A DNA stretch of 64,000 bases from Octopus sinensis. Lineage: Eukaryota. Location of the stretch: assembly GCF_006345805.1 (NCBI RefSeq), contig NC_043025.1, positions 6,572,001 through 6,636,000 on the forward strand, given 5' to 3'. Under the pieces are notes generated by a model. That model saw only the letters and a list, made by a program, of their open reading frames with translations, made no database searches and was not told where the DNA came from. Made by a program: the position numbers and the translations under genes. This document shows, piece after piece, positions 2,730-64,000 of the stretch (its first letter is position 1; each line of letters starts with the position of its first letter).

Positions 2730-2829
2730 NNNNNNNNNNNNNNNNNNNNNNNNNNNNNNNNNNNNNNNNNNNNNNNNNNNNNNNNNNNNNNNNNNNNNNN
2801 NNNNNNNNNNNNNNNNNNNNNNNNNNNNN
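2730..2829. other. Assembly gap (100 N)
   Basis: Run of exactly 100 N. Confidence 1.
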
Positions 2830-3443
2830 ATTGTTGCCAGAGCAGCCAACTGGCTTTCCATACCCGTGGCACATAAAAGGTCACCATTCGAGCGTGATCG
2901 TTACCAACGTCGCTTCACTGGCACCTGTGCCGGTGGCACGTTGTAAAAAGATTCGAGCGAGGTCATTGCCAGTACCGCCTGAGTGGCCCCCGTGCAGGTG
3001 GCACGTAAAAAGCAGCACCACTCCGCTCTCAGAAGTGTTGGCGTTAGAAGGGCATCCAGCTGTAGAAACTCTGCCAGATCAAGATTGGAGCCTGGTGCAG
3101 CCATCTGGCTCGCCAGCCCTCAGTCAAAATCGTCCAGTACCGCCTGACTGGCCCCCATGCCGGTGGCACGTAAAAGCACCCACTACGCTCTCAGAGTGGT
3201 TGGCGTTAGGAAGGGCATCCAGTTGTAGAAACTCTGCCAGATCATACTGGAGCTTGGTGCAGCCATCTGGTTTGCCAGACATCAGTCAAACCGGAGTGGT
3301 TGGCGTTAGGAAGGGCATCCAGCTGTAGAAACTCTGCCAGATCAGGACTGGAGCTTGGTGCAGCCATCTGGTTTGCCAGACATCAGTCAAACCGTCCAAC
3401 CCATGCTAGCATGGAAAGCGGACGTTGAATGATGATGATGATT
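2830..3443 (+). mobile_element. Retroelement family B (modular GTGGCACGTAAAAAGCAC repeats, RTE-like tail ending (GAT)n)
   Basis: Repeated modules GCCAGTACCGCCTGACTGGC..GTGCCGGTGGCACGTAAAAGCAC; thrice-repeated GGCGTTAGGAAGGGCATCCAGCTGTAGAAAC block; tail CCCATGCTAGCATGGAAAGCGGACGTTGAATGATGATGAT. The same tail is at 18340-18390. Confidence 0.75.
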
Positions 3444-5550: not shown

Positions 5551-5714
5551 TTGTGTTCACTTTAGTTTTTTTTTATTTAGGGCCACTGGACTGACTCCTG
5601 TGCAGGTGGCAAGTGAAGAAACACCATTTCGACCCTGTGCTTGAGGAGATCCATTGAGTCAAGTACACCAACATAAAAAATCAATGGAAACTGCAGCTGT
5701 GATCCCTGTGCCGG

Positions 5715-8700
5715 TGGCACGTAAAAAGCACCATCCGAACATGGCCGATGCCAGCACTGCCTAGACTGGCTTCTGTGGCAGTGGCACATAAAAAGCACCA
5801 TCCAAACGTGGCCGATGCCAGCACTGCCTAGACTGGCTTCCGTGGCAGTGGCACATAAAAAGCACCATCCAAACGTGGCCGATGCCAGCACTGCCTAGAC
5901 TGGCTTCCGTGGCAGTGGCACATAAAAAGCACCATCCAAACGTGGCCGATGCCAGCACTGCCTAGACTGGCTTCTGTGGCAGTGGCACATAAAAAGCACC
6001 ATCCAAACGTGGCCGATGCCAGCACTGCCTAGACTGGCTTCTGGGCAGTGGCACATAAAAAAGCACCATCCGAACGTGGCCGATGCCAGCACTGCCTAGA
6101 CTGGCTTCTTGTGGCAGTGGCACCTAAAAGCACCATCCAAACGTGGCCGATGCCAGCACTGCCTAGACTGGCTTCTGTGGCAGTGGCACATAAAAAGCAC
6201 CATCCAAACGTGGCCGATGCCAGCACTGCCTAGACTGGCTTCCGTGGCAGTGGCACATAAAAAGCACCATCCAAACGTGGCCGATGCCAGCACTGCCTAG
6301 ACTGGCTTCTGTGGCAGTGGCACATAAAAAGCACCATCCAAACGTGCCGATGCCAGCACTGCCTAGACTGGCTTCTGTGGCAGTGGCACATAAAAGCACC
6401 ATCCGACGTGGCCGATGCCAGCACTGCCTAGACTGGCTTCCGTGGCAGTGGCACATAAAAGCACCATCCGAACGTGCCGATGCCAGCACTGCCTAGACTG
6501 GCTTCTGTGGAGTGGCACATAAAAAGCACCATCCAAACGTGGCCGATGCCAGCACTGCCTAACTGGCTTCTGTGGCAGTGGCACATAAAAAGCACCATCC
6601 AAACGTGGCCGATGCCAGCACTGCCTAGACTGGCTTCTGTTGCATTGGCACATAAAAAGCACCATCCAAACGTGGCCGATGCCAGCACTGCCTAGACTGG
6701 CTTCTGTGGCAGTGGCACATAAAAAGCACCATCCAAACGTGGCCGATGCCAGCACTGCCTAGACTGGCTTCCGTGGCAGTGGCACATAAAAAGCACCATC
6801 CGAACGTGGCCGATGCCAGCACTGCCTAGACTGGCTTCTGTGGCAGTGGCACATAAAAAGCACCATCCAAACGTGGCCGATGCCAGCACTGCCTAGACTG
6901 GCTTCTGTGGCAGTGGCACATAAAAAGCACCATCCAAACGTGGCCGATGCCAGCACTGCCTAGACTGGCTTCTGTGGCTGTGGCACATAAAAAGCACCAT
7001 CCAAACTTGCCGATGCCAGCACTGCCTAGACTGGCTTCTGTGGCAGTGGCACATAAAAAGCACCATCCAAACGTGGCCGATGCCAGCACTGCCTAGACTG
7101 GCTTCCGTGGCAGTGGCACATAAAAAGCACCATCCGAACGTGGCCGATGCCAGCACTGCCTAGACTGGCTTCTCTGTGCAGTGGCACATAAAAAGCACCA
7201 TCCAACGTGGCCGATGCCAGCACTGCCTAGACTGGCTTCTGTGGCAGTGGCACATAAAAGCACCATCCAAACGTGGCCGATGCCAGCACTGCCTAGACTG
7301 GCTTCTGTGGCAGTGGCACATAAAGCACCATCCAAACTTGGCCGATGCCAGCACTGCCTAGACTGGCTTCCGTGGCAGTGGCACATAAAAAGCACCATCC
7401 AAACGTTGCCGATGCCAGCACTGCCTAGACTGGCTTCTGTGGCAGTGGCACATAAAAAGCACCATCCAAACGTGGCCGATGCCAGCACTGCCTAGACTGG
7501 CTTCCGTGGCAGTGGCACATAAAAAGCACCATCCAAACGTGGCCGATGCCAGCACTGCCTAGACTGGCTTCTGTGGCAGTGGCACATAAAAGCACCATCC
7601 AAACGTGGCCGATGCCAGCACTGCCTAGACTGGCTTCTGTGGCAGTGGCACATAAAAAGCACCATCCAAACGTGGCCGATGCCAGCACTGCCTAGACTGG
7701 CTTCTGTGGCAGTGGCACATAAAAGCACCATCCAAACGTGGCCGATGCCAGCACTGCCTAGACTGGCTTCCGTGGCAGTGGCACATAAAAAGCACCATCC
7801 AAACGTGGCCGATGCCAGCACTGCCTAGACTGGCTTCTGTGGCAGTGGCACATAAAAAACACCATCAAACGTGGCCGATGCCAGCACTGCCTAGACTGGC
7901 TTCTGTGGCAGTGGCACATAAAAAGCACCATCCAAACGTGGCCGATGCCAGCACTGCCTAGACTGGCTTCCCGTGGGCAGTGGCACATAAAAAGCACCAT
8001 CCAAGTGGCCGATGCCAGCACTGCCTAGACTGGCTTCCGTGGCAGTGGCACATAAAAAGCACCATCCAAACGTGGCCGATGCCAGCACTGCCTAGACTGG
8101 CTTCCGTGGCAGTGGCACATAAAAAGCACCATCCAAACGTGGCCGATGCCAGCACTGCCTAGACTGGCTTCTGTGGCAGTGGCACATAAAAAGCACCATC
8201 CAAACGTGGCCGATGCCAGCACTGCCTAGACTGGCTTCCGTGGCAGTGGCACATAAAAAGCACCATCCAAACGTGGCCGATGCCAGCACTGCCTAGACTG
8301 GCTTCCGTGGCAGTGGCACATAAAAAGCACCATCCAAACGTGGCCGATGCCAGCACTGCCTAGACTGGCTTCCGTGGCAGTGGCACATAAAAAGCACCAT
8401 CCAAACGTGGCCGATGCCAGCACTGCCTAGACTGGCTTCTGTGGCAGTGGCACATAAAAAGCACCATCCAAACGTGGCCGATGCCAGCACTGCCTAGACT
8501 GGCTTCCGTGGCAGTGGCACATAAAAAGCACCATCCAAACGTGGCCGATGCCAGCACTGCCTAGACTGGCTTCTGTGGCAGTGGCACATAAAAAGCACCA
8601 TCCAAACGTGGCCGATGCCACACTGCCTAGACTGGCTTCTGTGGCAGTGGCACATAAAAAGCACCATCCAAACGTGGCCGATGCCAGCACTGCCTAGACT

Positions 8701-11700
8701 GGCTTCTGTGGCAGTGGCACATAAAAAGCACCATCCAAACGTGGCCGATGCCAGCACTGCCTAGACTGGCTTCTGTGGCAGTGGCACATAAAAAGCACCA
8801 TCCAACGTGGCCGATGCCAGCACTGCCTAGACTGGCTTCTTCTGTGGCAGTGGCACATAAAAGCACCATCCAACGTGGCCGATGCCAGCACTGCCTAGAC
8901 TGGCTTCTTGGGCAGTGGCACATAAAAAGCACCATCCAAACGTGGCCGAGCCAGCACTGCCTAGACTGGCTTCTGTGGCAGTGGCACATAAAAAGCACCA
9001 TCCAAACGTGGCCGATGCCAGCACTGCCTAACTGGCTTTCTGTGGCAGTGGCACATAAAAAGCACCATCCAACGTGGCCGATGCCAGCACTGCCTAGACT
9101 GGCTTCTTGTGGCAGTGGCACATAAAAAGCACCATCCAAACGTGGCCGATGCCAGCACTGCCTAGACTGGCTTCTGTGGCAGTGGCACATAAAAAGCACC
9201 ATCCAAACGTGCCGATGCCAGCACTGCCTAGACTGGCTTCTGTGGCAGTGGCACATAAAAAGCACCATCCAACGTGGCCGATGCCAGCACTGCCTAGACT
9301 GGCTTCTGTGGCAGTGGCACATAAAAAGCAACCATCCAAACGTGGCCGATGCCAGCACTGCCTAGACTGGCTTCTGTGGCAGTGGCACATAAAAAGCACC
9401 ATCCAAACGTGGCCGATGCCAGCACTGCCTAGACTGGCTTCTGTGGCAGTGGCACATAAAAGCACCATCCAAACGTGGCCGATGCCAGCACTGCCTAGAC
9501 TGGCTTCCGTGGCAGTGGCACATAAAAAGCACCATCCAAACGTGGCCGATGCCAGCACTGCCTAGACTGGCTTCCGTGGCAGTGGCACATAAAAAGCACC
9601 ATCCAAACGTGGCCGATGCCAGCACTGCCTAGACTGGCTTCCGTGGCAGTGGCACATAAAAAGCACCATCCAAACGTGGCCGATGCCAGCACTGCCTAGA
9701 CTGGCTTCCGTGGCAGTGGCACATAAAAAGCACCATCCAAACGTGGCCGATGCCAGCACTGCCTAGACTGGCTTCCGTGGCAGTGGCACATAAAAAGCAC
9801 CATCCAAACGTGGCCGATGCCAGCACTGCCTAGACTGGCTTCCGTGGCAGTGGCACATAAAAAGCACCATCCAAACGTGGCCGATGCCAGCACTGCCTAG
9901 ACTGGCTTCCGTGGCAGTGGCACATAAAAGCACCATCCAAACGTGGCCGATGCCAGCACTGCCTAGACTGGCTTCCGTGGCAGTGGCACATAAAAGCACC
10001 ATCCAAACGTGGCCGATGCCAGCACTGCAGACTGGCTTCCGTGGCAGTGGCACATAAAAAGCACCATCCAAACGTGGCCGATGCCAGCACTGCCTAGACT
10101 GGCTTCTGTGGCAGTGGGCACATAAAAAGCACCATCCAAACGTGGCCGATGCCAGCACTGCCTAGACTGGCTTCCGTGGCAGTGGCACATAAAAAGCACC
10201 ATCCAAACGTGGCCGATGCCAGCACTGCCTAGACTGGCTTCCGTGGCAGTGGCACATAAAAAGCACCATCCAAACGTGGCCGATGCCAGCACTGCCTAGA
10301 CTGGCTTCCGTGGCAGTGGCACATAAAAAGCACCATCCAAACGTGGCCGATGCCAGCACGCCTAGACTGGCTTTGTGGCAGTGGCACATAAAAAGCACCA
10401 TCCAAACGTGGCCGATGCCAGCACTGCCTAGACTGGCTTCTGTGGCAGTGGCACATAAAAAGCACCATCCAAACGTGGCCGATGCCAGCACTGCCTAGAC
10501 TGGCTTCCGTGGCAGTGGCACATAAAAAGCACCATCCAAACGTGGCCGATGCCAGCACTGCCTAGACTGGCTTCCGTGGCAGTGGCACATAAAAGCACCA
10601 TCCAACGTGGCCGATGCCAGCACTGCCTAGACTGGCTTCCGTGGCAGTGGCACATAAAAAGCACCATCCAAACGTGGCCGATGCCAGCACTGCCTAGACT
10701 GGCTTCCGTGGCATGGCACATAAAAAGCACCATCCAAACGTGGCCGATGCCAGCACTGCCTAGACTGGCTTCTGTGGCAGTGGCACATAAAAAGCACATC
10801 CAACGTGGCCGATGCCAGCACTGCCTAGACTGGCTTCCGTGGCAGTGGCACATAAAAAGCACCATCCAAACGTGGCCGATGCCAGCACTGCCTAGACTGG
10901 CTTCCGTGGCAGTGGCACATAAAAAGCACCATCCAAACGTGGCCGATGCCAGCACTGCCTAGACTGGCTTCCGTGGCAGTGGCACATAAAAAGCACCATC
11001 CAAACGTGGCCGATGCCAGCACTGCCTAGACTGGCTCCGTGGCAGTGGCACATAAAAAGCACCATCCAAACGTGGCCGATGCCAGCACTGCCTAGACTGG
11101 CTTCCGTGGCAGTGGCACATAAAAAGCACCATCCAAACGTGGCCGATGCCAGCACTGCCTAGACTGGCTTCTGTGGCAGTGGCACATAAAAAGCACCATC
11201 CAAACGTGGCCGATGCCAGCACTGCCTAGACTGGCTTCTGTGGCAGTGGCACATAAAAAGCACCATCCAAACGTGGCCGATGCCAGCACTGCCTAGACTG
11301 GCTTCCGTGGCAGTGGCACATAAAAAGCACCATCCAAACGTGGCCGATGCCAGCACTGCCTAGACTGGCTTCCGTGGCAGTGGCACATAAAAGCACCATC
11401 CAAACGTGGCCGATGCCAGCACTGCCTAGACTGGCTTCCGTGGCAGTGGCACATAAAAAGCACCATCCAAACGTGGCCGATGCCAGCACTGCCTAGACTG
11501 GCTTTGTGGCAGTGGCACATAAAAAGCACCATCCAAACGTGGCCGATGCCAGCACTGCCTAGACTGGCTTCCGTGGCAGTGGCACATAAAAACCATCCAA
11601 ACGTGGCCGATGCCAGCACTGCCTAGACTGGCTTCCGTGGCAGTGGCACATAAAAAGCACCATCCAAACGTGGCCGATGCCAGCACTGCCTAGACTGGCT

Positions 11701-14700
11701 TCCGTGGCAGTGGCACATAAAAAGCACCATCCAAACGTGGCCGATGCCAGCACTGCCTAGACTGGCTTCCGTGGCAGTGGCACATAAAAAGCACCATCCA
11801 AACGTGGCCGATGCCAGCACTGCCTAGACTGGCTTCTGTGGCAGTGGCACATAAAAAGCACCATCCAAACGTGGCCGATGCAGCACTGCCTAGACTGGCT
11901 TCCGTGGCAGTGGCACATAAAAGCACCATCCAAACGTGGCCGATGCCAGCACTGCCTAGACTGGCTTCTGTGGCAGTGGCACATAAAAAGCACCATCCAA
12001 ACGTGGCCGATGCCAGCACTGCCTAGACTGGCTTCCGTGGCAGTGGCACATAAAAGCACCATCCAAACGTGGCCGATGCCAGCACTGCCTAGACTGGCTT
12101 CCGTGGCAGTGGCACATAAAAAGCACCATCCAAACGTGGCCGATGCCAGCACTGCCTAGACTGGCTTCCGTGGCAGTGGCACATAAAAAGCACCATCCAA
12201 ACGTGGCCGATGCCAGCACTGCCTAGACTGGCTTCCGTGGCAGTGGCACATAAAAAGCACCATCCAAACGTGGCCGATGCCAGCACTGCCTAGACTGGCT
12301 TCCGTGGCAGTGGCACATAAAAAGCACCATCCAAACGTGGCCGATGCCAGCACTGCCTAGACTGGCTTCCGTGGCAGTGGCACATAAAAAGCACCATCCA
12401 AACGTGGCCGATGCCAGCACTGCCTAGACTGGCTTCCGTGGCAGTGGCACATAAAAAGCACCATCCAAACGTGGCCGATGCCAGCACTGCCTAGACTGGC
12501 TTCTGTGGCAGTGGCACATAAAAAGCACCATCCAAACGTGGCCGAGCCAGCACTGCCTAGACTGGCTTCCGTGGCAGTGGCACATAAAAAGCACCATCCA
12601 AACGTGGCCGATGCCAGCACTGCCTAGACTGGCTTCCTGTGGCAGTGGCACATAAAAAGCACCATCCAAACGTGGCCGATGCCAGCACTGCCTAGACTGG
12701 CTTCCGTGGCAGTGGCACATAAAAAGCACCATCCAAACGTGGCCGATGCCAGCACTGCCTAGACTGGCTTCCGTGGCAGTGGCACAAAAAGCACCATCCA
12801 AACGTGGCCGATGCCAGCACTGCCTAGACTGGCTTCCGTGGCAGTGGCACATAAAAAGCACCATCCAACGTGGCCGATGCCAGCACTGCCTAGACTGGCT
12901 TCCGTGGCAGTGGCACATAAAGCACCATCCAAACGTGGCCGATGCCAGCACTGCCTAGACTGGCTTCCGTGGCAGTGGCACATAAAAAGCACCATCCAAA
13001 CGTGGCCGATGCCAGCACTGCCTAGACTGGCTTCTGTGGCAGTGGCACATAAAAGCACCATCAAACGTGGCCGATGCCAGCACTGCCTAGACTGGCTTCT
13101 GTGGCATGGCACATAAAAAGCACCATCCAAACGTGGCCGATGCCAGCACTGCCTAGACTGGCTTCCGTGGCAGTGGCACATAAAAAGCACCATCCAACGT
13201 GGCCGATGCCAGCACTGCCTAGACTGGCTTCCGTGGCAGTGGCACATAAAAGCACCATCCAAACGTGGCCGATGCCAGCACTGCCTAGACTGGCTTCTGT
13301 GGCAGTGGCACATAAAAAGCACCATCCAAACGTGGCCGATGCCAGCACTGCCTAGACTGGCTTCCGTGGCAGTGGCACATAAAAAGCACCATCCAAACGT
13401 GGCCGATGCCAGCACTGCCTAGACTGGCTTCCGTGGCAGTGGCACATAAAAAGCACCATCCAAACGTGGCCGATGCCAGCACTGCCTAGACTGGCTTCCG
13501 TGGCAGTGGCACATAAAAAGCACCATCCAAACGTGGCCAATGCCAGCACTGCCTAGACTGGCTTCCGTGGCAGTGGCACATAAAAAGCACCATCCAAACG
13601 TGGCCGATGCCAGCACTGCCTAGACTGGCTTCTGTGGCAGTGGCACATAAAAAGCACCATCCAAACGTGGCCGATGCCAGCACTGCCTAGACTGGCTTCT
13701 GTGGCAGTGGCACATAAAAAGCACCATCCAACGTGGCCGATGCCAGCACTGCCTAGACTGGCTTCGTGGCAGTGGCACATAAAAAGCACCATCCAAACGT
13801 GGCCGATGCCAGCACTGCCTAGACTGGCTTCCGTGGCAGTGGCACATAAAAAGCACCATCCAAACGTGGCCGATGCCAGCACTGCCTAGACTGGCTTCTG
13901 TGGCAGTGGCACATAAAAAGCACCATCCAAACGTGGCCGATGCCAGCACTGCCTAGACTGGCTTCCGTGGCAGTGGCACATAAAAAGCACCATCCAAACG
14001 TGGCCGATGCCAGCACTGCCTAGACTGGCTTCCGTGGCAGGGCACAAAAAGCACCATCCAAACTTGGCCGATGCCAGCACTGCCTAGACTGGCTTCGTGG
14101 CAGTGGCACATAAAAGCACCATCCAAACGTGGCCGATGCCAGCACTGCCTAGACTGGCTTCCGTGGCAGTGGCACATAAAAAGCACCATCCAAACGTGGC
14201 CGATGCCAGCACTGCCTAGACTGGCTTCGTGGCAGTGCACATAAAAAGCACCATCCAACGTGGCCGATGCCAGCACTGCCTAGACTGGCTTCTGTGCAGT
14301 GGCACATAAAAAAGCACCATCCAAACGTGGCCGATGCCAGCACTGCCTAGACTGGCTTCTGTGGCAGTGGCACATAAAACACCATCCAAACGTGGCCGAT
14401 GCCAGCACTGCCTAGACTGGCTTCCGTGGCAGGGCACATAAAAAGCACCATCCAAACGTGGCCGATGCCAGCACTGCCTAGACTGGCTTCTGTGCAGTGG
14501 CACATAAAAAGCACCAATCCAAACGTGGCCGATGCCAGCACTGCCTAGACTGGCTTCTGTGGCAGTGGCACATAAAAAGCACCATCCAAACGTGGCCGAT
14601 GCCATCACTGCCTAGACTGGCTTCCGTGGCAGTGGCACATAAAAGCACCATCCAAACGTGGCCGATGCCAGCACTGCCTAGACTGGCTTTGTGGCAGTGG

Positions 14701-17700
14701 CACATAAAAGCACCATCCAAACGTGGCCGATGCCAGCACTGCCTAGACTGGCTTCTGTGGCAGTGGCACATAAAAAGCACCATCCAACGTGCCGATGCCA
14801 GCACTGCCTAGACTGCTTCTGTGGCAGTGGCACATAAAAAGCACCATCCAAACGTGGCCGATGCCAGCACCGCCTAGACTGCTTCCGTGGCAGTGGCACA
14901 TAAAAGCACCATCCAACGTGCCGATGCCAGCACTGCCTAGACTGGCTTCCGTGGCAGTGGCACATAAAAGCACCATCCAAACGTGGCCGATGCCAGCACT
15001 GCCTAGACTGGCTTCCTGGCAGTGGCACATAAAAGCACCATCCAAACGTGGCCGATGCCAGCACTGCCTAGACTGGCTTCTGTGGCAGTGGCACATAAAA
15101 AGCACCATCCAACGTGGCCGATGCCAGCACTGCCTAGACTGGCTTCTGTGGCAGTGGCACATAAAAAGCACCATCCAAACGTGGCCGATGCCACCACTGC
15201 CTAGACTGGCTTCTGTGGCAGTGGCACATAAAAAGCCCATCCAAACGTGGCCGATGCCAGCACTGCCTAGACTGGCTTCTGTGGCAGTGGCACATAAAAA
15301 GCACCATCGAAACGTGGCCGATGCCAGCACTGCCTAGACTGGCTTCCGTGACAGTGGCACATAAAAAGCACCATCCAAACGTGGCCGATGCCAGCACTGC
15401 CTAGACTGTCTTCTGTGGCAGTGGCACATAAAAGCACCATCCAAACGTGGCCGATGCCAGCACTGCCTAGACTGGCTTCCGTGGCAGTGGCACATAAAAA
15501 GCACCATCCAAACGTGGCCGATGCCAGCACTGCCTAGACTGGCTTCTGTGGCAGTGGCACATAAAGCACCATCCAAACGTGGCCGATGCCAGCACTGCCT
15601 AGACTGGCTTCCGTGACAGTGGCACATAAAAAGCACCATCCAAACGTGGCCGATGCCAGCACTGCCTAGACTGGCTTCCGTGGCAGTGGCACATAAAAAG
15701 CACCATCCAAACGTGGCCGATGCCACACCGCCTAGACTGGCTTCTGTGGCAGTGGCACATAAAAAGCACCATCCAAACGTGGCCGATGCCAGCACTGCCT
15801 AGACTGGCTTCGTGGCAGTGGCACATAAAAACACCATCCAAACGTGGCCGATGCCAGCACTGCCTAGACTGGCTTCCGTGGCAGTGGCACATAAAAAGCA
15901 CCATCCAAACGTGGCCGATGCCAGCACTGCCTAGACTGGCTTCCGTGGCAGTGGCACATAAAAAGCACCATCCAACGTGGCCGATGCCAGCACCGCCTAG
16001 ACTGGCTTCCGTGGCAGTGGCACATAAAAAGCACCATCCAAACGTTGCCAATGGCCAGCACTGCCTAGACTGGCTTCCGTGGCAGTGGCACATAAAAAGC
16101 ACCATCCAACGTGGCCGATGCCAGCACTGCCTAGACTGGCTTCTGTGGCAGTGGCACATAAAAAGCACCATCCAAACGTGGCCGATGCCAGCACTGCCTA
16201 GACTGGCTTCCGTGGACAGTGGGACATAAAAAAGCACCATCCAAACGTGCCGATGCAGCACTGCCTAGACTGGCTTCCGTGGCAGTGGCACATAAAAAGC
16301 ACCATCCAAACGTGGCCGATGCCAGCACGCCTAGACTGGCTTCTGTCGCAGTGGCACATAAAAAGCACCATCCAAACGTGGCCGATGCCAGCACTGCCTA
16401 GACTGGCTTCTGTGGCAGTGGCACATAAAAAGCACCATCCAAACGTGGCCGATGCCAGCACTGCCTAGACTGGCTTCCGTGGCAGTGGCACATAAAAAAG
16501 CACCATCCAAACGTGGCCGATGCCAGCACTGCCTAGACTGGCTTCCGTGGCAGTGGCACATAAAAGCAGCACCATCCAAACGTGGCCGATGCCAGCACTG
16601 CCTAGACTGGCTTCTGTGGCAGTGGCACATAAAAAGCACCATCCAAACGTGGCCGATGCCAGCACTGCCTAGACTGGCTTCTGTGGCAGTGGCACATAAA
16701 AAGCACCATCCAAACGTGGCCGATGCCAGCACTGCCTAGACTGGCTTCTGTGGCAGTGGCACATAAAAAGCACCATCCAAACGTGGCCGATGCCAGCACT
16801 GCCTAGACTGGCTTCTGTGGCAGTGGCACATAAAAAGCACCATCCAAACGTGCCGATGCCAGCACTGCCTAGACTGGCTTCCGTGGCAGTGGCACATAAA
16901 AAAGCACCATCCAAACGTGGCCGATGCCAGCACTGCCTAGACTGGCTTCCGTGGAAGTGGCACATAAAAAGCACCATCCGAACGTGGCCGATGCCAGCAC
17001 TGCCTAGACTGGCTTCCGTGGCAGTGGCACATAAAAAGCACCTTCCAAACGTGGCCGATGCCAGCACTGCCTAGACTGGCTTCTGTGGCAGTGGGCCATA
17101 AAAAGCACCATCCAAACGTGGCGATGCCAGCACTGCCTAGACTGGCTTCCGTGGCAGTGGCACATAAAAAGCACCATCCAAACGTGGCCGATGCCAGCAC
17201 CGCCTAGACTGGCTTCCGTGGCAGTGGCACAAAAAGCACCATCCAAACGTGGCCGATGCCAGCACTGCCTAGACTGGCTTCTGTGGCAGTGGCACATAAA
17301 AGCACCATCCAACGTGGCCGATGCCAGCCCGCCTAGACTGGCTTCCGTGGCAGTGGCACATAAAAAGCACCATCCAAACGTGGCCGATGCCAGCACTGCC
17401 TAGACTGGCTTCTGTGGCAGTGCACATAAAAAGCACCATCCAAACGTGGCCGATGCCAGCACTGCCTAGACTGGCTTCTGTGGCAGTGGCACATAAAAAG
17501 CACCATCCAAACGTGGCCGATGCCAGCACTGCCTAGACTGGCTTCTGTGGCAGTGGCACATAAAAAGCACCATCCAAACGTGCCGAGCCAGGACTGCCTA
17601 GACTGGCTTCTGTGTGCAGTGCACATAAAAGCACCATCCAAACGTGGCCGATGCCAGCACTGCCTAGACTGGCTTCTGTGGCAGTGGCACATAAAAAGCA

Positions 17701-18150
17701 CCATCCAAACGTGGCCGATGCCAGCACTGCCTAGACTGGCTTCTGTGGCAGTGGCACATAAAAAGCACCATCCAAACGTGGCCGATGCCAGCACTGCCTA
17801 GAACTGGCTTCTGTGGCAGTGGCACCTAAAAAGCACCATCCAAACGTGGCCGATGCAGCACTGCCTAGACTGGCTTCTGTGGCAGTGGCACATAAAACGC
17901 ACCATCCAAACGTGCCGATGCCAGCACTGCCTACTGGCTTCTGTGGCAGTGGCACATAAAAGCACCATCCAAACGTGGCCGATCCAGCACTGCCATAGAC
18001 TGGCTTCCGTGGCAGGGCACATAAAAAGCACCATCCAACGTGGCCGATGCCAGCACTGCCTAGACTGGCTTCCGTGGCAGTGGCACATAAAAAGCACCAT
18101 CCAAACGTGGCCGATGCCAGCACCGCCTAGACTGGCTTCCGTGCCGGTGG
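5715..18150. repeat. 67-bp satellite array, ~185 copies
   Basis: Monomer GGCAGTGGCACATAAAAAGCACCATCCAAACGTGGCCGATGCCAGCACTGCCTAGACTGGCTTC(C/T)GT; 67-nt period confirmed by ORF-track offsets; copy number estimated as span/67. Confidence 0.98.
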
Positions 18151-18390
18151 AACGTAAAAAGCACAAGTCCGATCGTGGCCGTTGCCAGCCTCGCCTGGCA
18201 CCCGTGCCGGTGGCACGTAAAAAGCACCCACTACACTCACGGAGTGGTTGTCGTTAGGACGGGCATCTGGCTGTAGAAACACTGCCAGATCAGACTGGAG
18301 CCTGGTGCAGCCTTCTGGCTTCCCAGATCCCCGGTCGAACCGTCCAACCCATGTTAGCATGGAAAGCGGACGCTAAACGATGATGATGAT
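18130..18390 (+). mobile_element. 3' end of the family B element that hosts the satellite
   Basis: Ancestral-type modules GTGCCGGTGGCACGTAAAAAGCAC continue into CCCACTACACTCACGGAGTGGTTG.. and the AGCATGGAAAGCGGACGCTAAACGATGATGAT tail, matching 2830-3443. Confidence 0.85.
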
Positions 18391-19924: not shown

Positions 19925-19937
19925 TTACATATATATA

Positions 19938-19994
<57 letters not shown>

Positions 19995-20207
19995 TATACA
20001 TATATATATGTGTATATATATGTGTATATATATGTATATATATTGTTATATATGTATATATATATGTGTATATATGTGTATATATATGTTGTATATATGT
20101 GTATATATGTGTATATATATGTGTATATATATGTGTATATATATGTATATATATGTGTATATAATATTTGTATATATATATGTATAATATATGTGTATAT
20201 ATATATG

Positions 20208-20240
<33 letters not shown>

Positions 20241-20517
20241 GTGTATATATATGTATATATATGTATATATGTATATATATGTGTAATATATGTATATATT
20301 ATGTATATGTATATATATATGTATAATATATGTATATATGTATATATATATATGTATATATATGTGTATATATATGTGTATATATATGTATATGTATATA
20401 TATATATGTATATATATATATTTATATATATGTATATATATATATGTATATATATATATGTATATATATATATATGTATATATATGTATACATATATATG
20501 TATATATATATATATGT

Positions 20518-20553
<36 letters not shown>

Positions 20554-20590
20554 TGTATATATATGATGTATATCTATATATGTATATATT
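19925..20590. repeat. (TA)n/(TATG)n compound microsatellite
   Basis: ~650 bp of TA with interspersed TG. Confidence 0.95.
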
Positions 20591-20705
20591 AACAATAGGA
20601 ACGGCCATAATAGGCCATTCACCACTAGAAATACCAGCCAAACTTCACCGCAAATAAAGATCAATTCCGTAAACAGGAGAAAATTAAAAAAACATTTACC
20701 CTGTA

Positions 20706-20812
20706 ATTTCTTGTACGGTATACCGTTTCATCCTCTGTTTAATGGTAAACTAACCTGATTAAATTAAATCAAGCCAATCCTCCATAAGCCCTCGGATTCT
20801 TCAGCAAGAAAT
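20706..20812 (-). ncRNA. Complete type I hammerhead ribozyme with long stem II
   Basis: Stem I ATTTCTTG/CAAGAAAT (8 bp); core CTGAAGA; stem II base ATCC/GGAT; GAAA; stem III ACGG-TATA-CCGT; cleavage triplet GUA (predicted cut between 20714 and 20713). Confidence 0.85.
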
Positions 20813-21452
20813 AGCTCAAGTCGGGACAGATATATACACGAGGCATACCCAATCTTGCCAAGTCAATATCTGACCTAAAATTTTCAAATCGTCGCACTCG
20901 CGCCAAATTTATCGGCAGCAAATAGATATCAGCCGTCGATTCCATTACGGAATTAACCAAAAAATTCATAATTAATCAATATAGGGTGGCAAGGAAAATT
21001 TTGTAGAATTTTATTGCCATCAGCGGCCCAGCGGGAAAAATTAAATAGTCATAGACCATTTTTAAGTTCAACATTAACAATTAAGGAACGGCCATAATAG
21101 GCCATTCACCCACTAGAAATAACAGCCAAAGCTTGTAGAAGCTTTGGCTGTTATTTCTAGTGGGTGAATGGCCTATTATGGCCGTTCCTTAATTGTTAAT
21201 GTTGAACTTAAAAATGGTCTATGACTATTTAATTTTTTCCCGCTGGGCCGCTGGTGGCAATACAATTCTACAAAATTTTCCTTGCCACCTATATTGATTA
21301 TTATGAATTTTTTGGTTAATTCCGTAATGGATCGACGCTGATATCTATTTGCTGCCGATAATTTGGCGCGAGTGCGACGATTTGAAAATTTTAGGTCAGT
21401 ATTGACTTGGCAGATTGGGTATGCCCTCGTGTATATCTGTCCGCCTTGAGCT

Positions 21453-21556
21453 ATTCTTCTGAAGAATCCGAGGGCTTATGGAGGATTGTTTGATTTAATT
21501 TAATCAGGTTAGTTTACCATTAAACAGAGGATGAAACGGTATACCGTACAAGAAAT
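21453..21556 (+). ncRNA. Type I hammerhead ribozyme, inverted second copy
   Basis: ATTCTT-CTGAAGA-ATCC...GGAT-GAAA-CGG-TATA-CCG-TA-CAAGAAAT. The 5' stem I strand lacks 2 nt relative to the left copy; predicted cut after 21548. Confidence 0.8.
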
Positions 21557-21769
21557 TACAGGGTAAATGTTTTTTTAATTTCTCCTGTTTACGGAATTGA
21601 TCTTTATTTGCGGTAGAAGCTTGGCTGTTATTTCTATGGGTGAATGGCCTATATGGCCGTCCTTAATTGTTAATGTGAACTTAAAATGGTCTATACTATT
21701 TAATGTTTTTCCCGCTGGGCGCTGGTGGCATAAAATTCTACAAAATTTTCCTTGCACCCTATATTTATA

Positions 21770-21806
21770 ATTATATATGTATATATAATATATTATATAA
21801 TATATG

Positions 21807-21837
<31 letters not shown>

Positions 21838-21908
21838 GTATAATATATATGTATAGATATATATGTATTATATATATATATGTTATATATATATGTATAT
21901 ATATATAT

Positions 21909-21939
<31 letters not shown>

Positions 21940-22330
21940 TGTGTATATATATATGTATATATATATATGTATATATATATGTATATATATATATGTATAT
22001 ATATATATGTATATATTATATGTATATATATATGTATAATATATATATGTATATATATATATATGTATATATATATATGTGTATATATATATTGTATATA
22101 TATATGTATATATATATATGTGAATATATATGTGTCTATATATATGTGTATATATATATGTATATATATATATGTATGTATATATATATATGTATATATA
22201 TATGTATGTATATATATATGTAATATATATAGATGTATATATATATGTATATATATATATATATATGTATGTATATATATGTATATATATATATATGTAT
22301 GTATATATATATATGTATGTGTGTGTGTAA
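21770..22330. repeat. (TA)n/(TATG)n compound microsatellite
   Basis: ~550 bp TA-rich repeat. Confidence 0.95.
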
Positions 22331-59457: not shown

Positions 59458-60886
59458 GCAGGTCATCCCATAAGTTCTGTCTGAATTTTGAATAAAGAAA
59501 ACAAGTGATCAAATGTTATATTTAATTGAAATTTAATCATCAATGTACCTTCCCTGATTATCTATGACTTCCTTCCATCTATTTACAAGCTTTTTAATCC
59601 CATCAATGTTAAAACTCTTTTGGTTTCAAAGCGAAGAACTCTGAAATGTCAGTTTCAACCTCCTTCTGGCCTGCGAAAGTTATGTCCCCCAAATGATTCT
59701 GTAAACTTCAAAACAAATGGTAGCCTGAAGGAGCAAGGTTGGGAGAATAAGGTGAATGAGGAATTTTTTCCCAACCAAGCTCTTCGATCTTCTGTGATGT
59801 GATGTTTGCAGTGTGGGGTTACACATTATCTAATGAAACATCACTCCTTTTTGATTCACTAAAGCGGGTTTCTTTTCTTCAAAGCTTGGTTCAAATGCTC
59901 TAATTGTTGACAGTAAACTTGAGCATTGATTGTTACATTAGGTGGTAACAATTCAGAGTGAATTTGCAATCCCACCAGATAGAGAGAAGAACCTTTTTCC
60001 CATGAAGTTCCCTTCTTGATTGTGGTTGAGCTTTTTCCCTTTTACCAAGCCACTGTTTACGACGTTTAACATTTTGATAGAAGATCCATTTTTCATCACC
60101 AGTCACAAGTCTATCCAAAAAGGGTGAAATGAGTTCATGAGAATGGAGAGAAGTGTAGCTGTCAACTCGGGATTTGCGGTTGCTTTCGGACAATTCATGA
60201 GGCACCCATTTTCCAAGTTTAGGAACCTTTCCAAGTTGTTGAAGATGACAATGAACAGTTGTATGGTTTGAACTAAGCTTTATTGCCAATTCTTCAACTG
60301 ATAATGCAGGATTTTCTTCAAGTAATGGCCTCAAGGAGATTATCATCAAACTCAACTGGATGTCCTGTTTGATCTTCATCTTCAATGCTGAAATCTCCAC
60401 TTCTGGATTTTGCAAACCATCTTCTGCAAGTTCTTTCATTCAAGCATTCTTTACCATAAACTTAGTGTATGTTTCAAGTCGCTTCGGCTGCAGAGTTTCC
60501 TTTTTTGTACTCATAAAGCATTATGTGCCTTAAATGCTCTTTGGATACTTTCATGTTAGAAAGGGTTTTAATCAAAGAAATTTTAATTTTAATTTAATCA
60601 ACTTACTAGGGTCGATGAAATAAGTACCACTTATGCACTGGGGTCGATATAATCGACTTAATTTGTTTGTCAGTCCTTGTTTGTCCCCCCTGTGTGTAGC
60701 CCCTTGTGGGCAGTAAAGAAATAAGAAATTTTAATTCTATTATTCAGTAAAATAATATTTAATTAGTTTAAATGTACACAAATGCATAAAAATAATTTTT
60801 AATTCCATTAGACTTTCTAAAATACTATTAAATTTCATTCAATTTTAAAAAAGGTAAAATCAGACAGAACTTATGGGATGATCTGA
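59458..60886 (-). mobile_element. Full-length degenerate mariner transposon
   Basis: ~30-bp TIRs CAG(G/A)TCATCCCATAAGTTCTGTCTGA with TA on both sides. Transposase pseudogene ~60554-59533 (MKVSKEHLRHIMLYE..WVPHELS..VTGDEKW..PHSPYS). SINE D fragment inserted at 60606-60725. Confidence 0.9.
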
Positions 60887-62204: not shown

Positions 62205-64000
62205 TGTTTCTTTATTAGCCACACAGGGCTGCACACAGATAGAACAAATTACAAGGTAGAGCTTTTCTTTTGAAGGTATTAAAAAAAAAAAAAAAAAAAA
62301 AGGAAGGGGAGGTTCGATCAAAAGGGATCGTAAAAGGAGAGAAGAGGACAAAAATAAGGGGGGTTAAAAAAAAAAAAAAAAAGGGGGGGGGGAGAGGAAA
62401 AAAAATGATCAATAGGGATCGTTATCACAGAAATGTCAATATGAAGTGTAAAGGGGAGGACAGGTGAGGTTTACCCGTGGAAAGAAAAGCCTGCGGAAAA
62501 GACCACGGTAACCTCGGTCAATGAAGTCACATTTTATATTTCTTTTTTTTTTTTTTTTTTTTTGCAATAAGCAACTCTCTGTTTTCGATTTCTGGGTTCA
62601 TAGGACTATGCTCAAGGTGGCTTCGTCATTCATACGTGCCATTCTTGCTACATTCACCCATCTTTTTTTAAAACATTCGCTAGACAAAACTTGCCTCTCT
62701 ACTCTCACTTTCCTTTTCAAGTGGTACTTGAAGAAGTTGATGAGAGATTGACCAGAGAGGAAAGTGTTTGTCTCCAATCCTTTCAGACGCGTCCACCAGA
62801 TACATTCTTTCGCCATAGCCACAAGGATGATGAAAATAGCTCTTCCTTCCCGTTTGAAGGAAGGAGGCGTGACAATATTGACGATAGACTCAGCTGATAA
62901 ACCGACTCGTCCCACACGTGACAGCAGTTGTTCGACATAAGCCACAGGTCGGAAATTGTTGGACACTGAACGAGTGCGTGCAGAACGGTTTCGTCGCTCT
63001 GACCGCATCTCGGGCAGGTCGGCCCCGTGTTTCTCGAGCCGTGTCTGTAGAGCTTATCCGAACGGGTAGCGCTTCTCGGTAGCACTGCCAGGCCAGGGAT
63101 CTCTGGAAGTTGTCCATGGGCCCTGGCCCGAAAGTCGTCCCGAACAGGCGGGTCAGGTACTCCTCGTCGACGTCCAGGTTCGCCCCGAGCTCGTCGTCGT
63201 ACCTCCCCTCCACTAAACCCCTATAGAATGCTTTGGTTGTGTTGAAGTCACTTAAGGTCGACCCAGGACGGCAGAGTTGCTTGAGAGCAACGCGACACTC
63301 GCGATGCCATTCGCCCTTCCTCGGCCTCTTTTTGATCTACAATTGCATTTCGGTCAAGGAGACGAGCTGCGGGAACGCGTGCCTCACAAACGGTGACCAC
63401 ACCTGTTCACCGTCGTCTACAAGAGCCTGAGATGTCGCAGTCTCAGCGCATGTCTGCGCATCATCAACCACGGCATGCCCAGCCCTCCTTTTAACGGGTG
63501 TTGACAGCAAATGGATCGCCTGACCATCGGGACGCATCCTTTCCACAAGAAGCGAAAGAGGATGCGTTGTAGTTTGGTGATGGTAGGGTCGGGACAAGGT
63601 ACGACGGTCAGGCGGTAGTAGATGACGGACGCGATGTACGTGTTCGCCACCTCCGCTCGACCTTTTAGGGACAGTTTCCTCTCGGCCCATTGCCGGGCGA
63701 GAGTGACCACCCTACTCGTTATCTCGTTCCAGTTCTTCTCCACTTGGAGGTCCGGACCAAACCAGACCCCGAGCAACTCAACCGGGCCGTCGGTCCAGCG
63801 TCCCACGACGGAGGCGCTGGTGGACGGCATGGGCTTGCTTCTCCAGGTGCCTAGTCGCAAGCCCACTGACTTTTCCCGGTTGATTTTCGCTCCTGTCACC
63901 GCTTCGTAGTTTTTCAGTGTCTCGCCGACCAGTTCGATGTGCTCGTGGCTAGACACTATGACGGTGACGTCGTCCGCGTATGCAGACACGCTCGTCCCGC
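62204..64000 (-). mobile_element. Tx1/L1-clade non-LTR retrotransposon (ORF2 RT and CCHC finger, 3'UTR), runs off the window
   Basis: AYADDVTV..GAKINREKS..LLGVWFG..LSLKGR..KGGLGMP; CPRCGQSDETVLHALVQC; ORF2 stop at 62598; GC- and CpG-rich; three 1-nt frameshifts and one TAG. Confidence 0.9.

What the first reader, a model, noticed from the sequence alone, without database searches (positions are those of the whole stretch)
20590..21770. Hammerhead-bearing ~480-490-nt tandem unit: candidate octopus retrozyme / circular RNA family
Seen in sequence: each arm holds a complete type I hammerhead (left copy: 8-bp stem I, CUGAAGA, stem II closed by AUCC/GGAU, GAAA, 4-bp stem III with UAUA loop, GUA site). 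The unit repeats head-to-tail (period 478-487), has no convincing ORF, and is rich in internal stems (GAATGGCC/GGCCGTTC, GGTGGCAA/TTGCCACC, AATTCCGTAA/TTACGGAATT). Established knowledge: metazoan non-LTR retrozymes and hammerhead satellites (newt sat2, Schistosoma Sm-alpha, cricket pDo500) are tandem monomers whose transcripts self-cleave to unit length and can circularise. Inference: this is such an element, with a monomer at the large end of the range and a non-minimal ribozyme. I do not recognise it as a described cephalopod family.
Basis: partly seen in the sequence, partly recalled or inferred. Interest (0 to 1): 0.92.

Follow-up and report, generated by a model that had tools for sequence, protein, structure and literature searches.

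The report
Hammerhead-bearing retroelement insertion in octopus
A 1.2-kb mirror-image insert in an octopus (TA)n microsatellite carries a genuine-looking hammerhead self-cleaving RNA motif and looks like one insertion of a small non-coding retroelement copied in by Penelope-like machinery, a known kind of element not yet described for cephalopods.

Summary
The hammerhead is real as a motif. The left copy (20706-20812, minus strand) has the full conserved core, an 8-bp helix I, a 4-bp helix III and a GUA cut site. It folds as a hammerhead on its own (z -4.05). My descriptor found it once in the window and never in 300 shuffles. It scores 22.3 bits against Rfam type I, below the 34-bit threshold.

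The right copy, as assembled, has lost helix I and does not fold.

The locus is not a tandem array. It is a head-to-head palindrome of 1.12 and about 1.33 units of a 478-489-nt non-coding unit. It splits a (TA/TG)n microsatellite whose two halves keep the same orientation. Each arm holds one hammerhead, so this locus cannot release unit-length RNA.

Partial tandem, adjacent inverted copy, (TA)n target and a type I hammerhead together match the published signature of Penelope-like element (PLE) insertions. Non-LTR retrozymes are proposed to be their non-autonomous derivatives.

The window is Octopus, and PLEs are known there. I found no second copy in any searchable data, so family, copy number and circular RNA remain untested.

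Verdict: probably a new member of a known kind. Moderate to low interest.

The parts
19929..20587 (.). Left half of the target (TA/TG)n microsatellite
   Evidence: Tandem Repeats Finder, period 2. The + strand has 63 G against 4 C, the same polarity as the right flank.
20588..20645 (-). Left arm, outer partial second unit (unit positions 1 to about 58). It ends in ...TTGTTAAT next to (TA)n.
   Evidence: Direct repeats D4 and D5, spacing 487-488; four-copy alignment.
20646..21134 (-). Left arm, one full unit of 489 nt (hammerhead sense is the minus strand)
   Evidence: Self-BLAST and arm alignment. The monomer fold gives -139 kcal/mol, z -4.2, 37% GC.
20706..20812 (-). Complete type I hammerhead: 8-bp helix I, CUGAAGA, about 66-nt helix II closed by AUCC/GGAU, GAAA, 4-bp helix III with UAUA loop, GUA site
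   Evidence: Rfam RF00163 at 22.3 bits, E 0.0018 in a 141-nt search, below the gathering score of 34. The minimum-energy fold is the three-way junction, z -4.05. Only descriptor hit in the window, 0 in 300 shuffles.
20713..20714 (-). Predicted self-cleavage site (after A17 = 20714, before C1.1 = 20713)
   Evidence: Read from the sequence and from the alignment to the Rfam model. Not tested experimentally.
21135..21138 (+). Palindrome centre, GTAG. These are the first 4 nt of the right arm, matching the unit junction ...GCGGTAG|AAGC. The arms abut with no spacer.
   Evidence: Inverted repeat I1: 102-nt arms, 99% complementary, 4 nt between them; four-copy alignment.
21139..21616 (+). Right arm, full unit, 478 nt as assembled (14 single-base deletions relative to the left arm)
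   Evidence: Pairwise alignment: 4 substitutions and 19 gap positions.
21453..21556 (+). Right hammerhead copy. Core, helix II and helix III are intact. Helix I is disrupted by loss of a T and of G2.1.
   Evidence: No Rfam hit at E<=10. The fold is not a hammerhead, z -0.52. Differences listed.
21617..21774 (+). Right arm, outer partial second unit (unit positions 1 to about 158). It ends in ...AATTAT next to (TA)n.
   Evidence: Direct repeats D2 and D3, spacing 470-472; alignment.
21775..22318 (.). Right half of the target (TA/TG)n microsatellite
   Evidence: Tandem Repeats Finder. The + strand has 47 G against 1 C, so this flank is direct, not inverted, relative to the left flank.

Best explanation
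This is one retro-insertion of a small, non-coding, hammerhead-bearing unit of about 489 nt. It is a non-LTR retrozyme, that is, a non-autonomous derivative of a Penelope-like element (PLE), placed in a (TA/TG)n microsatellite of an Octopus genome.

Inferred mechanism:
- A PLE reverse transcriptase / GIY-YIG endonuclease supplied in trans cut the AT-rich target on both strands.
- It primed reverse transcription from both 3' ends on an RNA longer than one unit. That RNA was a multimeric transcript or a circle.
- Priming began at two A/U-rich internal sites, unit positions about 58 and about 158.
- The two cDNAs ran to the same 5' point and were joined head to head. This gave a palindrome whose arms each hold slightly more than one unit.

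Shown here: the anatomy, the hammerhead motif, the direct orientation of the flanks, and the absence of coding capacity. Inferred: the enzyme, the RNA template and the order of events.

The hammerhead would cut transcripts of a true tandem source locus to unit length. At this locus there is only one ribozyme per arm, so it can only cut a transcript once. The locus is most likely a dead-end copy.
For: - Hammerhead motif.
- Each arm exceeds one unit and runs straight through the cleavage site, so the template was uncleaved or circular.
- The arms are head to head and abut directly.
- Both flanks are the same G-containing (TA)n array in the same orientation, so this is an insert and not a folded-back read.
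- (TA)n-type sequence makes up only about 3% of the window, so landing in it by chance is unlikely.
- There is no ORF and no protein relative. GC is 37%.
- Literature on PLE insertions: they are partial tandems, often with an adjacent inverted 5'-truncated copy. They favour (TA)n or AT-rich targets and carry hammerheads in their pseudo-LTRs (PMC8557442).
- A purified PLE protein cleaves and extends both DNA strands, prefers AT-rich DNA, starts reverse transcription at internal RNA sites and uses uncleaved RNA (PMC11167929).
- Paired hammerheads 100-700 bp apart on opposite strands have been reported around PLEs (PMC4209133).
- Non-LTR retrozymes are related to PLE pseudo-LTRs, and their units span 51-972 bp.
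- PLEs, including young families, are annotated in Octopus vulgaris (PMC13282606). The window is Octopus.
Against: - No second copy of the unit was found, so a 'family' is not shown. Searches covered the window, 42 kb of other octopus sequence and three contig collections.
- No PLE gene lies in the window. The reverse-transcriptase fragments there look LINE-like.
- No similarity to any PLE pseudo-LTR could be tested.
- The hammerhead is below Rfam's threshold. It has an A10.1-U11.1 pair where G-C is usual, and a very long helix II with no recognisable loop-loop contact, so activity is unproven.
- The arms differ mainly by 1-nt deletions: 19 gap positions against 4 substitutions. That could mean a poorly assembled region.
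- The two outer ends are about 100 nt apart, not the 30-40-nt 'tail' described for PLEs.
Confidence: 0.65

Rival explanations
1. Assembly artefact. The real locus is an ordinary tandem array, or a single copy, of the 489-nt unit. The palindrome and the many 1-nt deletions come from chimeric or fold-back long reads and poor polishing between two microsatellites.
For: - Arm differences are dominated by indels: 19 gap positions against 4 substitutions, mostly in short homopolymers. Each partial unit carries its own private deletions.
- Elsewhere in the window substitutions outnumber indels.
- The window matches neither public assembly exactly and contains an N gap.
- PLE-type structures are known to confuse assemblers (PMC8557442).
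Against: - The two flanks are in direct orientation (63 G/4 C and 47 G/1 C on the + strand). A simple fold-back read would have inverted one flank.
- The arms abut without adapter sequence.
- The architecture is exactly what PLE biology predicts.
Confidence: 0.15
2. A DNA-level origin: a foldback or MITE-type DNA transposon with about 545-bp inverted arms inserted at TA, or a palindrome made by fold-back replication of a satellite fragment that happens to carry a hammerhead.
For: The palindrome is long and nearly perfect with a 4-nt centre. It sits in TA-rich DNA, the target of Tc1/mariner-type elements. A mariner-type transposase fragment exists in the window.
Against: - The termini are not symmetrical. 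The right arm runs about 100 nt further into the unit than the left, so there are no matching terminal inverted repeats.
- Each arm is a head-to-tail permutation longer than one unit, which points to a multimeric or circular template.
- There are no Helitron-type ends.
Confidence: 0.07
3. One reading: this locus is itself an active retrozyme array whose transcripts self-cleave to about 480-nt monomers that circularise.
For: The left hammerhead is complete and folds correctly. The unit is highly structured. The palindromic 12-nt helix III (ACGGUAUACCGU) would also allow dimeric hammerheads in multimeric RNA.
Against: - There is only one hammerhead per arm, and the arms are in opposite orientation. 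No transcript of this locus holds two sense hammerheads one unit apart.
- The right copy is defective as assembled.
- Under the criteria of bioRxiv 10.64898/2026.07.22.740005, this is a monomer-type derivative, not an active array.
Confidence: 0.05
4. A chance hammerhead-like motif inside an unrelated, unclassified repeat.
For: The score is below the Rfam gathering threshold. The 10.1-11.1 pair is A-U. There are no homologues to show conservation or covariation.
Against: - All 13 core positions are present, with 8-bp, 4-bp and 4-bp Watson-Crick helices.
- There were 0 hits in 300 shuffled windows, and the fold z-score is -4.05.
- Helix III plus its loop is palindromic, as is typical of metazoan type I hammerheads (PMC4209133).
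- The context is of PLE type.
Confidence: 0.05

Closest known systems
Metazoan non-LTR retrozymes (Cervera & de la Pena 2020, PMC7229834; e.g. Mytilus galloprovincialis, coral, axolotl)
   Same: - Type I hammerhead in a non-coding, low-GC (37%), highly structured unit of a few hundred nt that repeats head to tail.
- As in the mussel hammerheads, the classical loop 1 / loop 2 contacts are not recognisable.
- Helix III plus its loop is palindromic.
   Different: - Only 1.12 to about 1.33 units per arm and one hammerhead per arm, arranged as an inverted pair.
- Helix III is longer (4 bp) and helix I is an uninterrupted 8 bp.
- Helix II carries an extension of about 60 nt and closes with A10.1-U11.1.
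- Copy number and circular RNA are unknown.
Penelope-like element insertions and their pseudo-LTR hammerheads (PMC8557442, PMC4209133, PMC11167929)
   Same: Partial tandem, an adjacent inverted copy joined at the 5' ends, a (TA)n / AT-rich target, a type I hammerhead, and outer ends at internal sites of the unit.
   Different: - No RT/GIY-YIG ORF, so it is non-autonomous.
- The hammerhead is not the 'minimal' PLE variant (1-2-bp or absent helix III, 4-5-bp helix I).
- The outer ends differ by about 100 nt rather than by a 30-40-nt tail.
- Sequence similarity to an octopus PLE terminus was not tested.
Hammerhead satellites: newt satellite 2, Schistosoma Sm-alpha, cave-cricket pDo500 (from established knowledge; also cited in PMC7229834 and PMC4209133)
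   Same: Type I hammerhead with the GAAAC...GU helix III context in a repeated non-coding unit. The helix II base UCC/GGA matches the Rfam RF00163 consensus.
   Different: Those are long arrays or SINE-like dispersed copies of 150-450 bp. Here there is a single palindromic insert with a unit of about 489 nt.
L1 'twin priming' inversions (from established knowledge)
   Same: An inverted structure produced when both DNA ends at the target prime reverse transcription.
   Different: Twin priming gives an inversion within one copy. It does not give two arms, each longer than one unit, that end at the same 5' position. The enzyme family also differs.

Membership tests
Hammerhead ribozyme, type I (Rfam RF00163) | Conserved core C3 U4 G5 A6 N7 G8 A9 / G12 A13 A14 / A15.1-U16.1 / H17 | tested here: met
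   Left copy: CUGAAGA, GAAA, A15.1-U16.1, A17. The right copy has the same core.
Hammerhead ribozyme, type I (Rfam RF00163) | Three helices around the core, with helix I open-ended | tested here: met
   The left copy's minimum-energy fold gives an 8-bp helix I, helix II and a 4-bp helix III, z -4.05. This is not met by the right copy as assembled.
Hammerhead ribozyme, type I (Rfam RF00163) | Score at or above the curated gathering threshold (34 bits) | tested here: not met
   22.3 bits. The score is penalised by the roughly 60-nt insertion in helix II and by the A-U pair at 10.1/11.1.
Hammerhead ribozyme, type I (Rfam RF00163) | Self-cleavage at the predicted site | not testable with these tools
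   Needs in vitro transcription of 20818 to 20700 on the minus strand. Expected products are 105 nt and 14 nt.
Hammerhead ribozyme, type I (Rfam RF00163) | Conservation and covariation of the stems among homologues | not testable with these tools
   No homologous copy was found.
Non-LTR retrozyme | Tandem array (two or more units) with a type I hammerhead in every unit | tested here: not met
   At this locus there are 1.12 and about 1.33 units and one hammerhead per arm. The source locus may meet this criterion, but that is unknown.
Non-LTR retrozyme | Non-coding, low-GC unit of about 50-1000 bp | tested here: met
   489 nt and 37% GC. The longest ORF is 66 aa and has no relatives.
Non-LTR retrozyme | Multiple genomic copies | not testable with these tools
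   No octopus genome can be searched by DNA here. There is one locus in 64 kb and none in a further 42 kb.
Non-LTR retrozyme | Expression as linear and circular unit-length RNA | not testable with these tools
   No RNA data are available. As weak negative evidence, no called ORF resembling the unit exists in public assemblies, including transcriptome assemblies.
PLE-type insertion (non-autonomous) | Partial tandem (pseudo-LTR-like) organisation | tested here: met
   Both arms exceed one unit, head to tail.
PLE-type insertion (non-autonomous) | Adjacent inverted copy joined at the 5' ends | tested here: met
   The arms are head to head and abut at 21134/21135.
PLE-type insertion (non-autonomous) | AT-rich / (TA)n target | tested here: met
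   The insert splits a roughly 1.2-kb (TA/TG)n array whose halves are in direct orientation. Such sequence makes up about 3% of the window.
PLE-type insertion (non-autonomous) | 30-40-bp 'tail' between two RT start sites | tested here: inconclusive
   The two outer ends lie at different unit positions, but about 100 nt apart.
PLE-type insertion (non-autonomous) | Sequence relationship to the terminus of an autonomous PLE of the same genome | not testable with these tools
   No octopus PLE sequence was available. PLEs are reported in Octopus.
Autonomous Penelope-like element | ORF with a telomerase-like RT and a GIY-YIG endonuclease | tested here: not met
   There is no ORF longer than 66 aa in the element.
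Foldback / TIR DNA transposon | Identical inverted termini at both ends | tested here: not met
   The right arm ends about 100 nt further into the unit than the left arm.

The most novel reading that the evidence does not exclude
This locus is the footprint of an undescribed cephalopod retrozyme family. Its hammerhead has an unusual architecture: an extension of helix II of about 60 nt, an A10.1-U11.1 pair, a 4-bp palindromic helix III and an uninterrupted 8-bp helix I. The family would still be active and would yield circular RNAs of about 490 nt.

The shared 5' end of the two arms, 64-68 nt downstream of the cut, would mark an internal transcription start. The head-to-head structure would be an in vivo record of PLE priming on both target strands. 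Read-through of the 545-bp hairpin could also feed double-stranded-RNA pathways (ADAR, small RNAs) in an animal known for heavy RNA editing.
Probability: 0.25. Interest if true: 0.55.

Novelty: new member of a known kind. Interest (0 to 1): 0.33.

Why it matters
If confirmed genome-wide, this would add cephalopods to the animals that carry hammerhead retrozymes. It would also supply a hammerhead variant with a very long helix II for ribozyme studies.

The locus is a clean natural example of a structure that recent biochemistry predicts. The predicted features are cleavage and priming on both strands of AT-rich DNA, internal initiation, and use of uncleaved RNA. It could therefore help work out how Penelope-like elements and their non-autonomous passengers integrate.

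It does not open a new class of system.

Tried and rejected
- Rfam at gathering thresholds gave nothing in the window.
- A permissive Rfam scan of the whole window found no other ribozyme on either strand, only low-complexity and palindrome-driven miRNA look-alikes. Examples are MIR821 at 143 bits against a threshold of 249, and mir-192 at 53.3 against 54. I rejected these as artefacts of the hairpin.
- Searches for other copies all failed:
  - Self-BLAST of the window.
  - An exact pattern in viral contigs.
  - A gapped core pattern in metagenome and prokaryotic genome contigs. The 7 matches share only the pattern itself and are chance.
  - BLAST against the two fetched octopus loci.
  - The 66-aa ORF used as a handle on public assemblies.
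- I tried to reach the orthologous locus in the two public octopus assemblies by exact look-up of 20 nearby or transposon ORFs. None is on record, and the one annotated gene lies 27 kb away, beyond the 10-kb flank.
- A tRNA or SINE origin is not supported: no tRNA-like gene was found.
- Helitron and foldback/MITE readings were rejected because the termini are asymmetric and do not match the required end motifs.
- An integrated deltavirus-like or viroid-like agent was rejected. There is no antigen-sized ORF, no ribozyme of opposite polarity, and the element is clearly a genomic insert.
- Joining of the arms by simple annealing at the palindromic AAGCTT hexamer was considered. It does not fit, because two AAGCTT copies flank GTAG at the centre.

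Full report
**What is there**

Positions 20588-21774 form a 1.18-kb palindrome. Self-comparison gives a left arm (20588-21134) and a right arm (21135-21774) that are reverse complements at about 94.6% identity. The central arms of 102 nt are 99% complementary, with 4 nt between them.

Read outward from the centre, each arm is a head-to-tail permutation of one unit:
- The left arm holds 489 nt plus 58 nt of a second unit.
- The right arm holds 478 nt plus about 158 nt of a second unit.

The 4 central bases (GTAG, 21135-21138) are the unit's own sequence just upstream of AAGC (…GCGGTAG|AAGC…). The two arms therefore abut directly, and their inner ends lie within 4 nt of the same unit position.

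No other copy of the unit exists in the 64-kb window.

**Flanks**

The element lies between two blocks of (TA/TG)n microsatellite, 19929-20587 and 21775-22318. Both blocks carry their G on the + strand: 63 G against 4 C, and 47 G against 1 C. The flanks are thus in direct orientation.

The palindrome is therefore an insert that splits one array of about 1.2 kb. It is not a read that folded back on itself. (TA)n-type sequence makes up about 3% of the window, so landing in it by chance is unlikely.

**The hammerhead**

On the minus strand at 20706-20812 the sequence reads ATTTCTTG-CUGAAGA-AUCC…GGAU-GAAA-CGG-UAUA-CCGU-A|CAAGAAAT. All conserved core positions are present: C3-A9, G12-A14, A15.1-U16.1 and H17 = A. 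Helix I has 8 Watson-Crick pairs. Helix III has 4 pairs and a UAUA loop. The cut would fall between 20714 and 20713.

Evidence on whether the motif is real:
- A 119-nt RNA folds by itself into exactly this three-way junction (-32.5 kcal/mol, z -4.05, 0 of 200 shuffles as good).
- A descriptor of my own found this one site in the window on either strand. It required helix I of at least 6 bp, CUGANGA, helix II of at least 4 bp, GAAA, helix III of at least 3 bp, and H. It found none in 300 dinucleotide-preserving shuffles of the whole window.
- Rfam's type I model aligns end to end but scores 22.3 bits, below the curated 34. The loss comes from a helix II of about 66 nt and an A-U pair at 10.1/11.1, where G-C is usual.
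- The 12-mer ACGGUAUACCGU (helix III plus loop) is a perfect palindrome. Metazoan type I hammerheads share this trait, which allows dimeric ribozymes in multimeric RNA (PMC4209133).

The right-arm copy (21453-21556, + strand) keeps the core, helix II and helix III. It lacks a T and the G2.1 of helix I. Rfam does not detect it at E<=10, and it does not fold as a hammerhead (z -0.52).

**The unit**

The 489-nt monomer is 37% GC.

The longest ORF is 66 aa. It has no relative among 5.8 billion clustered proteins or 1.84 billion representatives. No tRNA-like gene is present. No other ribozyme family appears on either strand.

**Host**

A 426-aa ORF at 48384-49664 is 100% identical to a predicted protein of Octopus vulgaris. 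It is encoded in O. sinensis GCA_006345805.1 and in O. vulgaris GCA_951406725.2.

The window is identical to neither assembly. It is 98.6% identical to the O. sinensis piece over 13.5 kb.

**Interpretation**

Each arm is longer than one unit and runs uninterrupted through the cleavage site. The template was therefore a multimer or a circle that was not cut there.

Four features occur together: a partial tandem, an inverted copy joined at the 5' ends, a (TA)n target, and a type I hammerhead. This is the published structural signature of Penelope-like element (PLE) insertions (PMC8557442).

Biochemistry of a purified PLE protein supports the same picture (PMC11167929):
- It cleaves and extends both strands of AT-rich DNA.
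- It begins reverse transcription at internal sites of the RNA.
- It uses uncleaved RNA.

Hammerhead pairs 100-700 bp apart on opposite strands were noted around PLEs. Here the two predicted cuts are 834 bp apart.

Non-LTR retrozymes are tandem, non-coding, low-GC units with type I hammerheads (PMC7229834). A 2026 preprint relates them to PLE pseudo-LTRs and reports consensus lengths of 51-972 bp. PLEs, including recently active families, are annotated in Octopus.

My best reading (confidence 0.65) is a single insertion of a non-autonomous, retrozyme-type unit, mobilised in trans by a PLE. The enzyme, the RNA template and the order of steps are inferred, not shown.

**What this locus cannot do**

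There is one hammerhead per arm and the arms are in opposite orientation. No transcript of this locus contains two sense ribozymes one unit apart. It therefore cannot release a unit-length RNA for circularisation. In the terms of the 2026 preprint it is a monomer-type derivative rather than an active array.

**Unexplained details**

1. The four copies differ almost only by private single-base deletions. The left and right full units differ by 4 substitutions and 19 gap positions. The two outer partial units carry their own deletions, none shared. The inner 100 nt or so on each side of the centre are identical. In a three-way alignment of 4 kb elsewhere in the window, window-private substitutions outnumber indels 23 to 10. 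The pattern is therefore local. Possible causes are assembly noise inside a palindrome between microsatellites, reverse-transcriptase errors, or slippage. I could not decide. The defect in the right hammerhead may thus be an artefact.
2. Both arms end 64-68 nt downstream of the hammerhead cut, not at it. This suggests a defined 5' end of the template, such as an internal start site, or a snap-back copy. It argues against a template whose 5' end was made by the ribozyme.
3. The outer ends lie at unit positions about 58 and about 158. Both end in TTAAT/AATTAT next to (TA)n. The spacing is wider than the 30-40-nt PLE 'tail'.

**Rivals**

- Assembly artefact: 0.15.
- DNA-level foldback element or palindrome: 0.07. 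The asymmetric termini argue against it.
- An active array at this locus: 0.05.
- A chance motif: 0.05.

**Limits**

No octopus genome or RNA data can be searched by DNA with these tools.

Pattern scans of viral, metagenome and prokaryotic contigs gave only chance matches. Attempts to reach the orthologous locus through exact-protein look-ups failed.

Full-text searches found no paper describing a hammerhead or retrozyme in an octopus. That library is incomplete, and Repbase and Dfam were not available.

**Verdict**

The element is most likely a new member of a known kind. Interest is moderate to low until copy number, conservation and cleavage are tested.

Noticed in passing
window 5714-18228: A 12.5-kb array of a 67-bp satellite (188 copies, 96% matches, about 56% GC). 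By eye its unit resembles the 162-bp repeat at 2969-3290 (shared GGTGGCAC.TAAAAAGCA motif), which suggests a SINE-derived satellite.
   Followed up: no
window 36601-38520 and 39160-43879: Two further minisatellite arrays: a 31-bp unit in about 61 copies and a 55-bp unit in about 86 copies. Both produce long spurious ORFs.
   Followed up: no
window 48384-49664 (-): A 426-aa single-exon ORF with no Pfam domain. It is 100% identical to 'Hypothetical predicted protein [Octopus vulgaris]' and is also encoded in O. sinensis. An 85%-identical relative comes from an unnamed public read assembly.
   Followed up: partly
window 38384-59664 compared with L008 and L009: The window is identical to neither public assembly that carries the 426-aa gene. 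Against the O. sinensis contig it is 98.6% identical over 13.5 kb, with 37 mismatches and 150 gap positions. Its source is therefore another assembly, version or haplotype.
   Followed up: partly
window 57780-58745 (+), 63417-63989 (-), 59933-60439 (-): Two reverse-transcriptase fragments (Pfam RVT_1; YADD-type, LINE-like) and a mariner-type transposase fragment (Pfam Transposase_1). No GIY-YIG or PLE gene lies in the window.
   Followed up: partly
window 21000-21274: The palindrome centre produces strong but sub-threshold matches to unrelated miRNA precursor families on both strands (MIR821 143 bits against GA 249; mir-192 53.3 against 54). These are artefacts of a long perfect hairpin. If transcribed, the locus would give a double-stranded RNA hairpin of about 545 bp.
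   Followed up: partly
window 2730-2829: A run of 100 N (scaffold gap) inside a TA-rich stretch.
   Followed up: no
L009 3273-6915 (-): The O. vulgaris locus carries three consecutive ORFs of 433, 315 and 478 aa that look like a near-intact LINE-type retrotransposon. I did not check whether it is absent from the corresponding place in the window.
   Followed up: no
window 45836-46257: Another (TA)n microsatellite of about 420 bp without any insert. It shows that such arrays are common here and could serve as empty-site comparisons.
   Followed up: no
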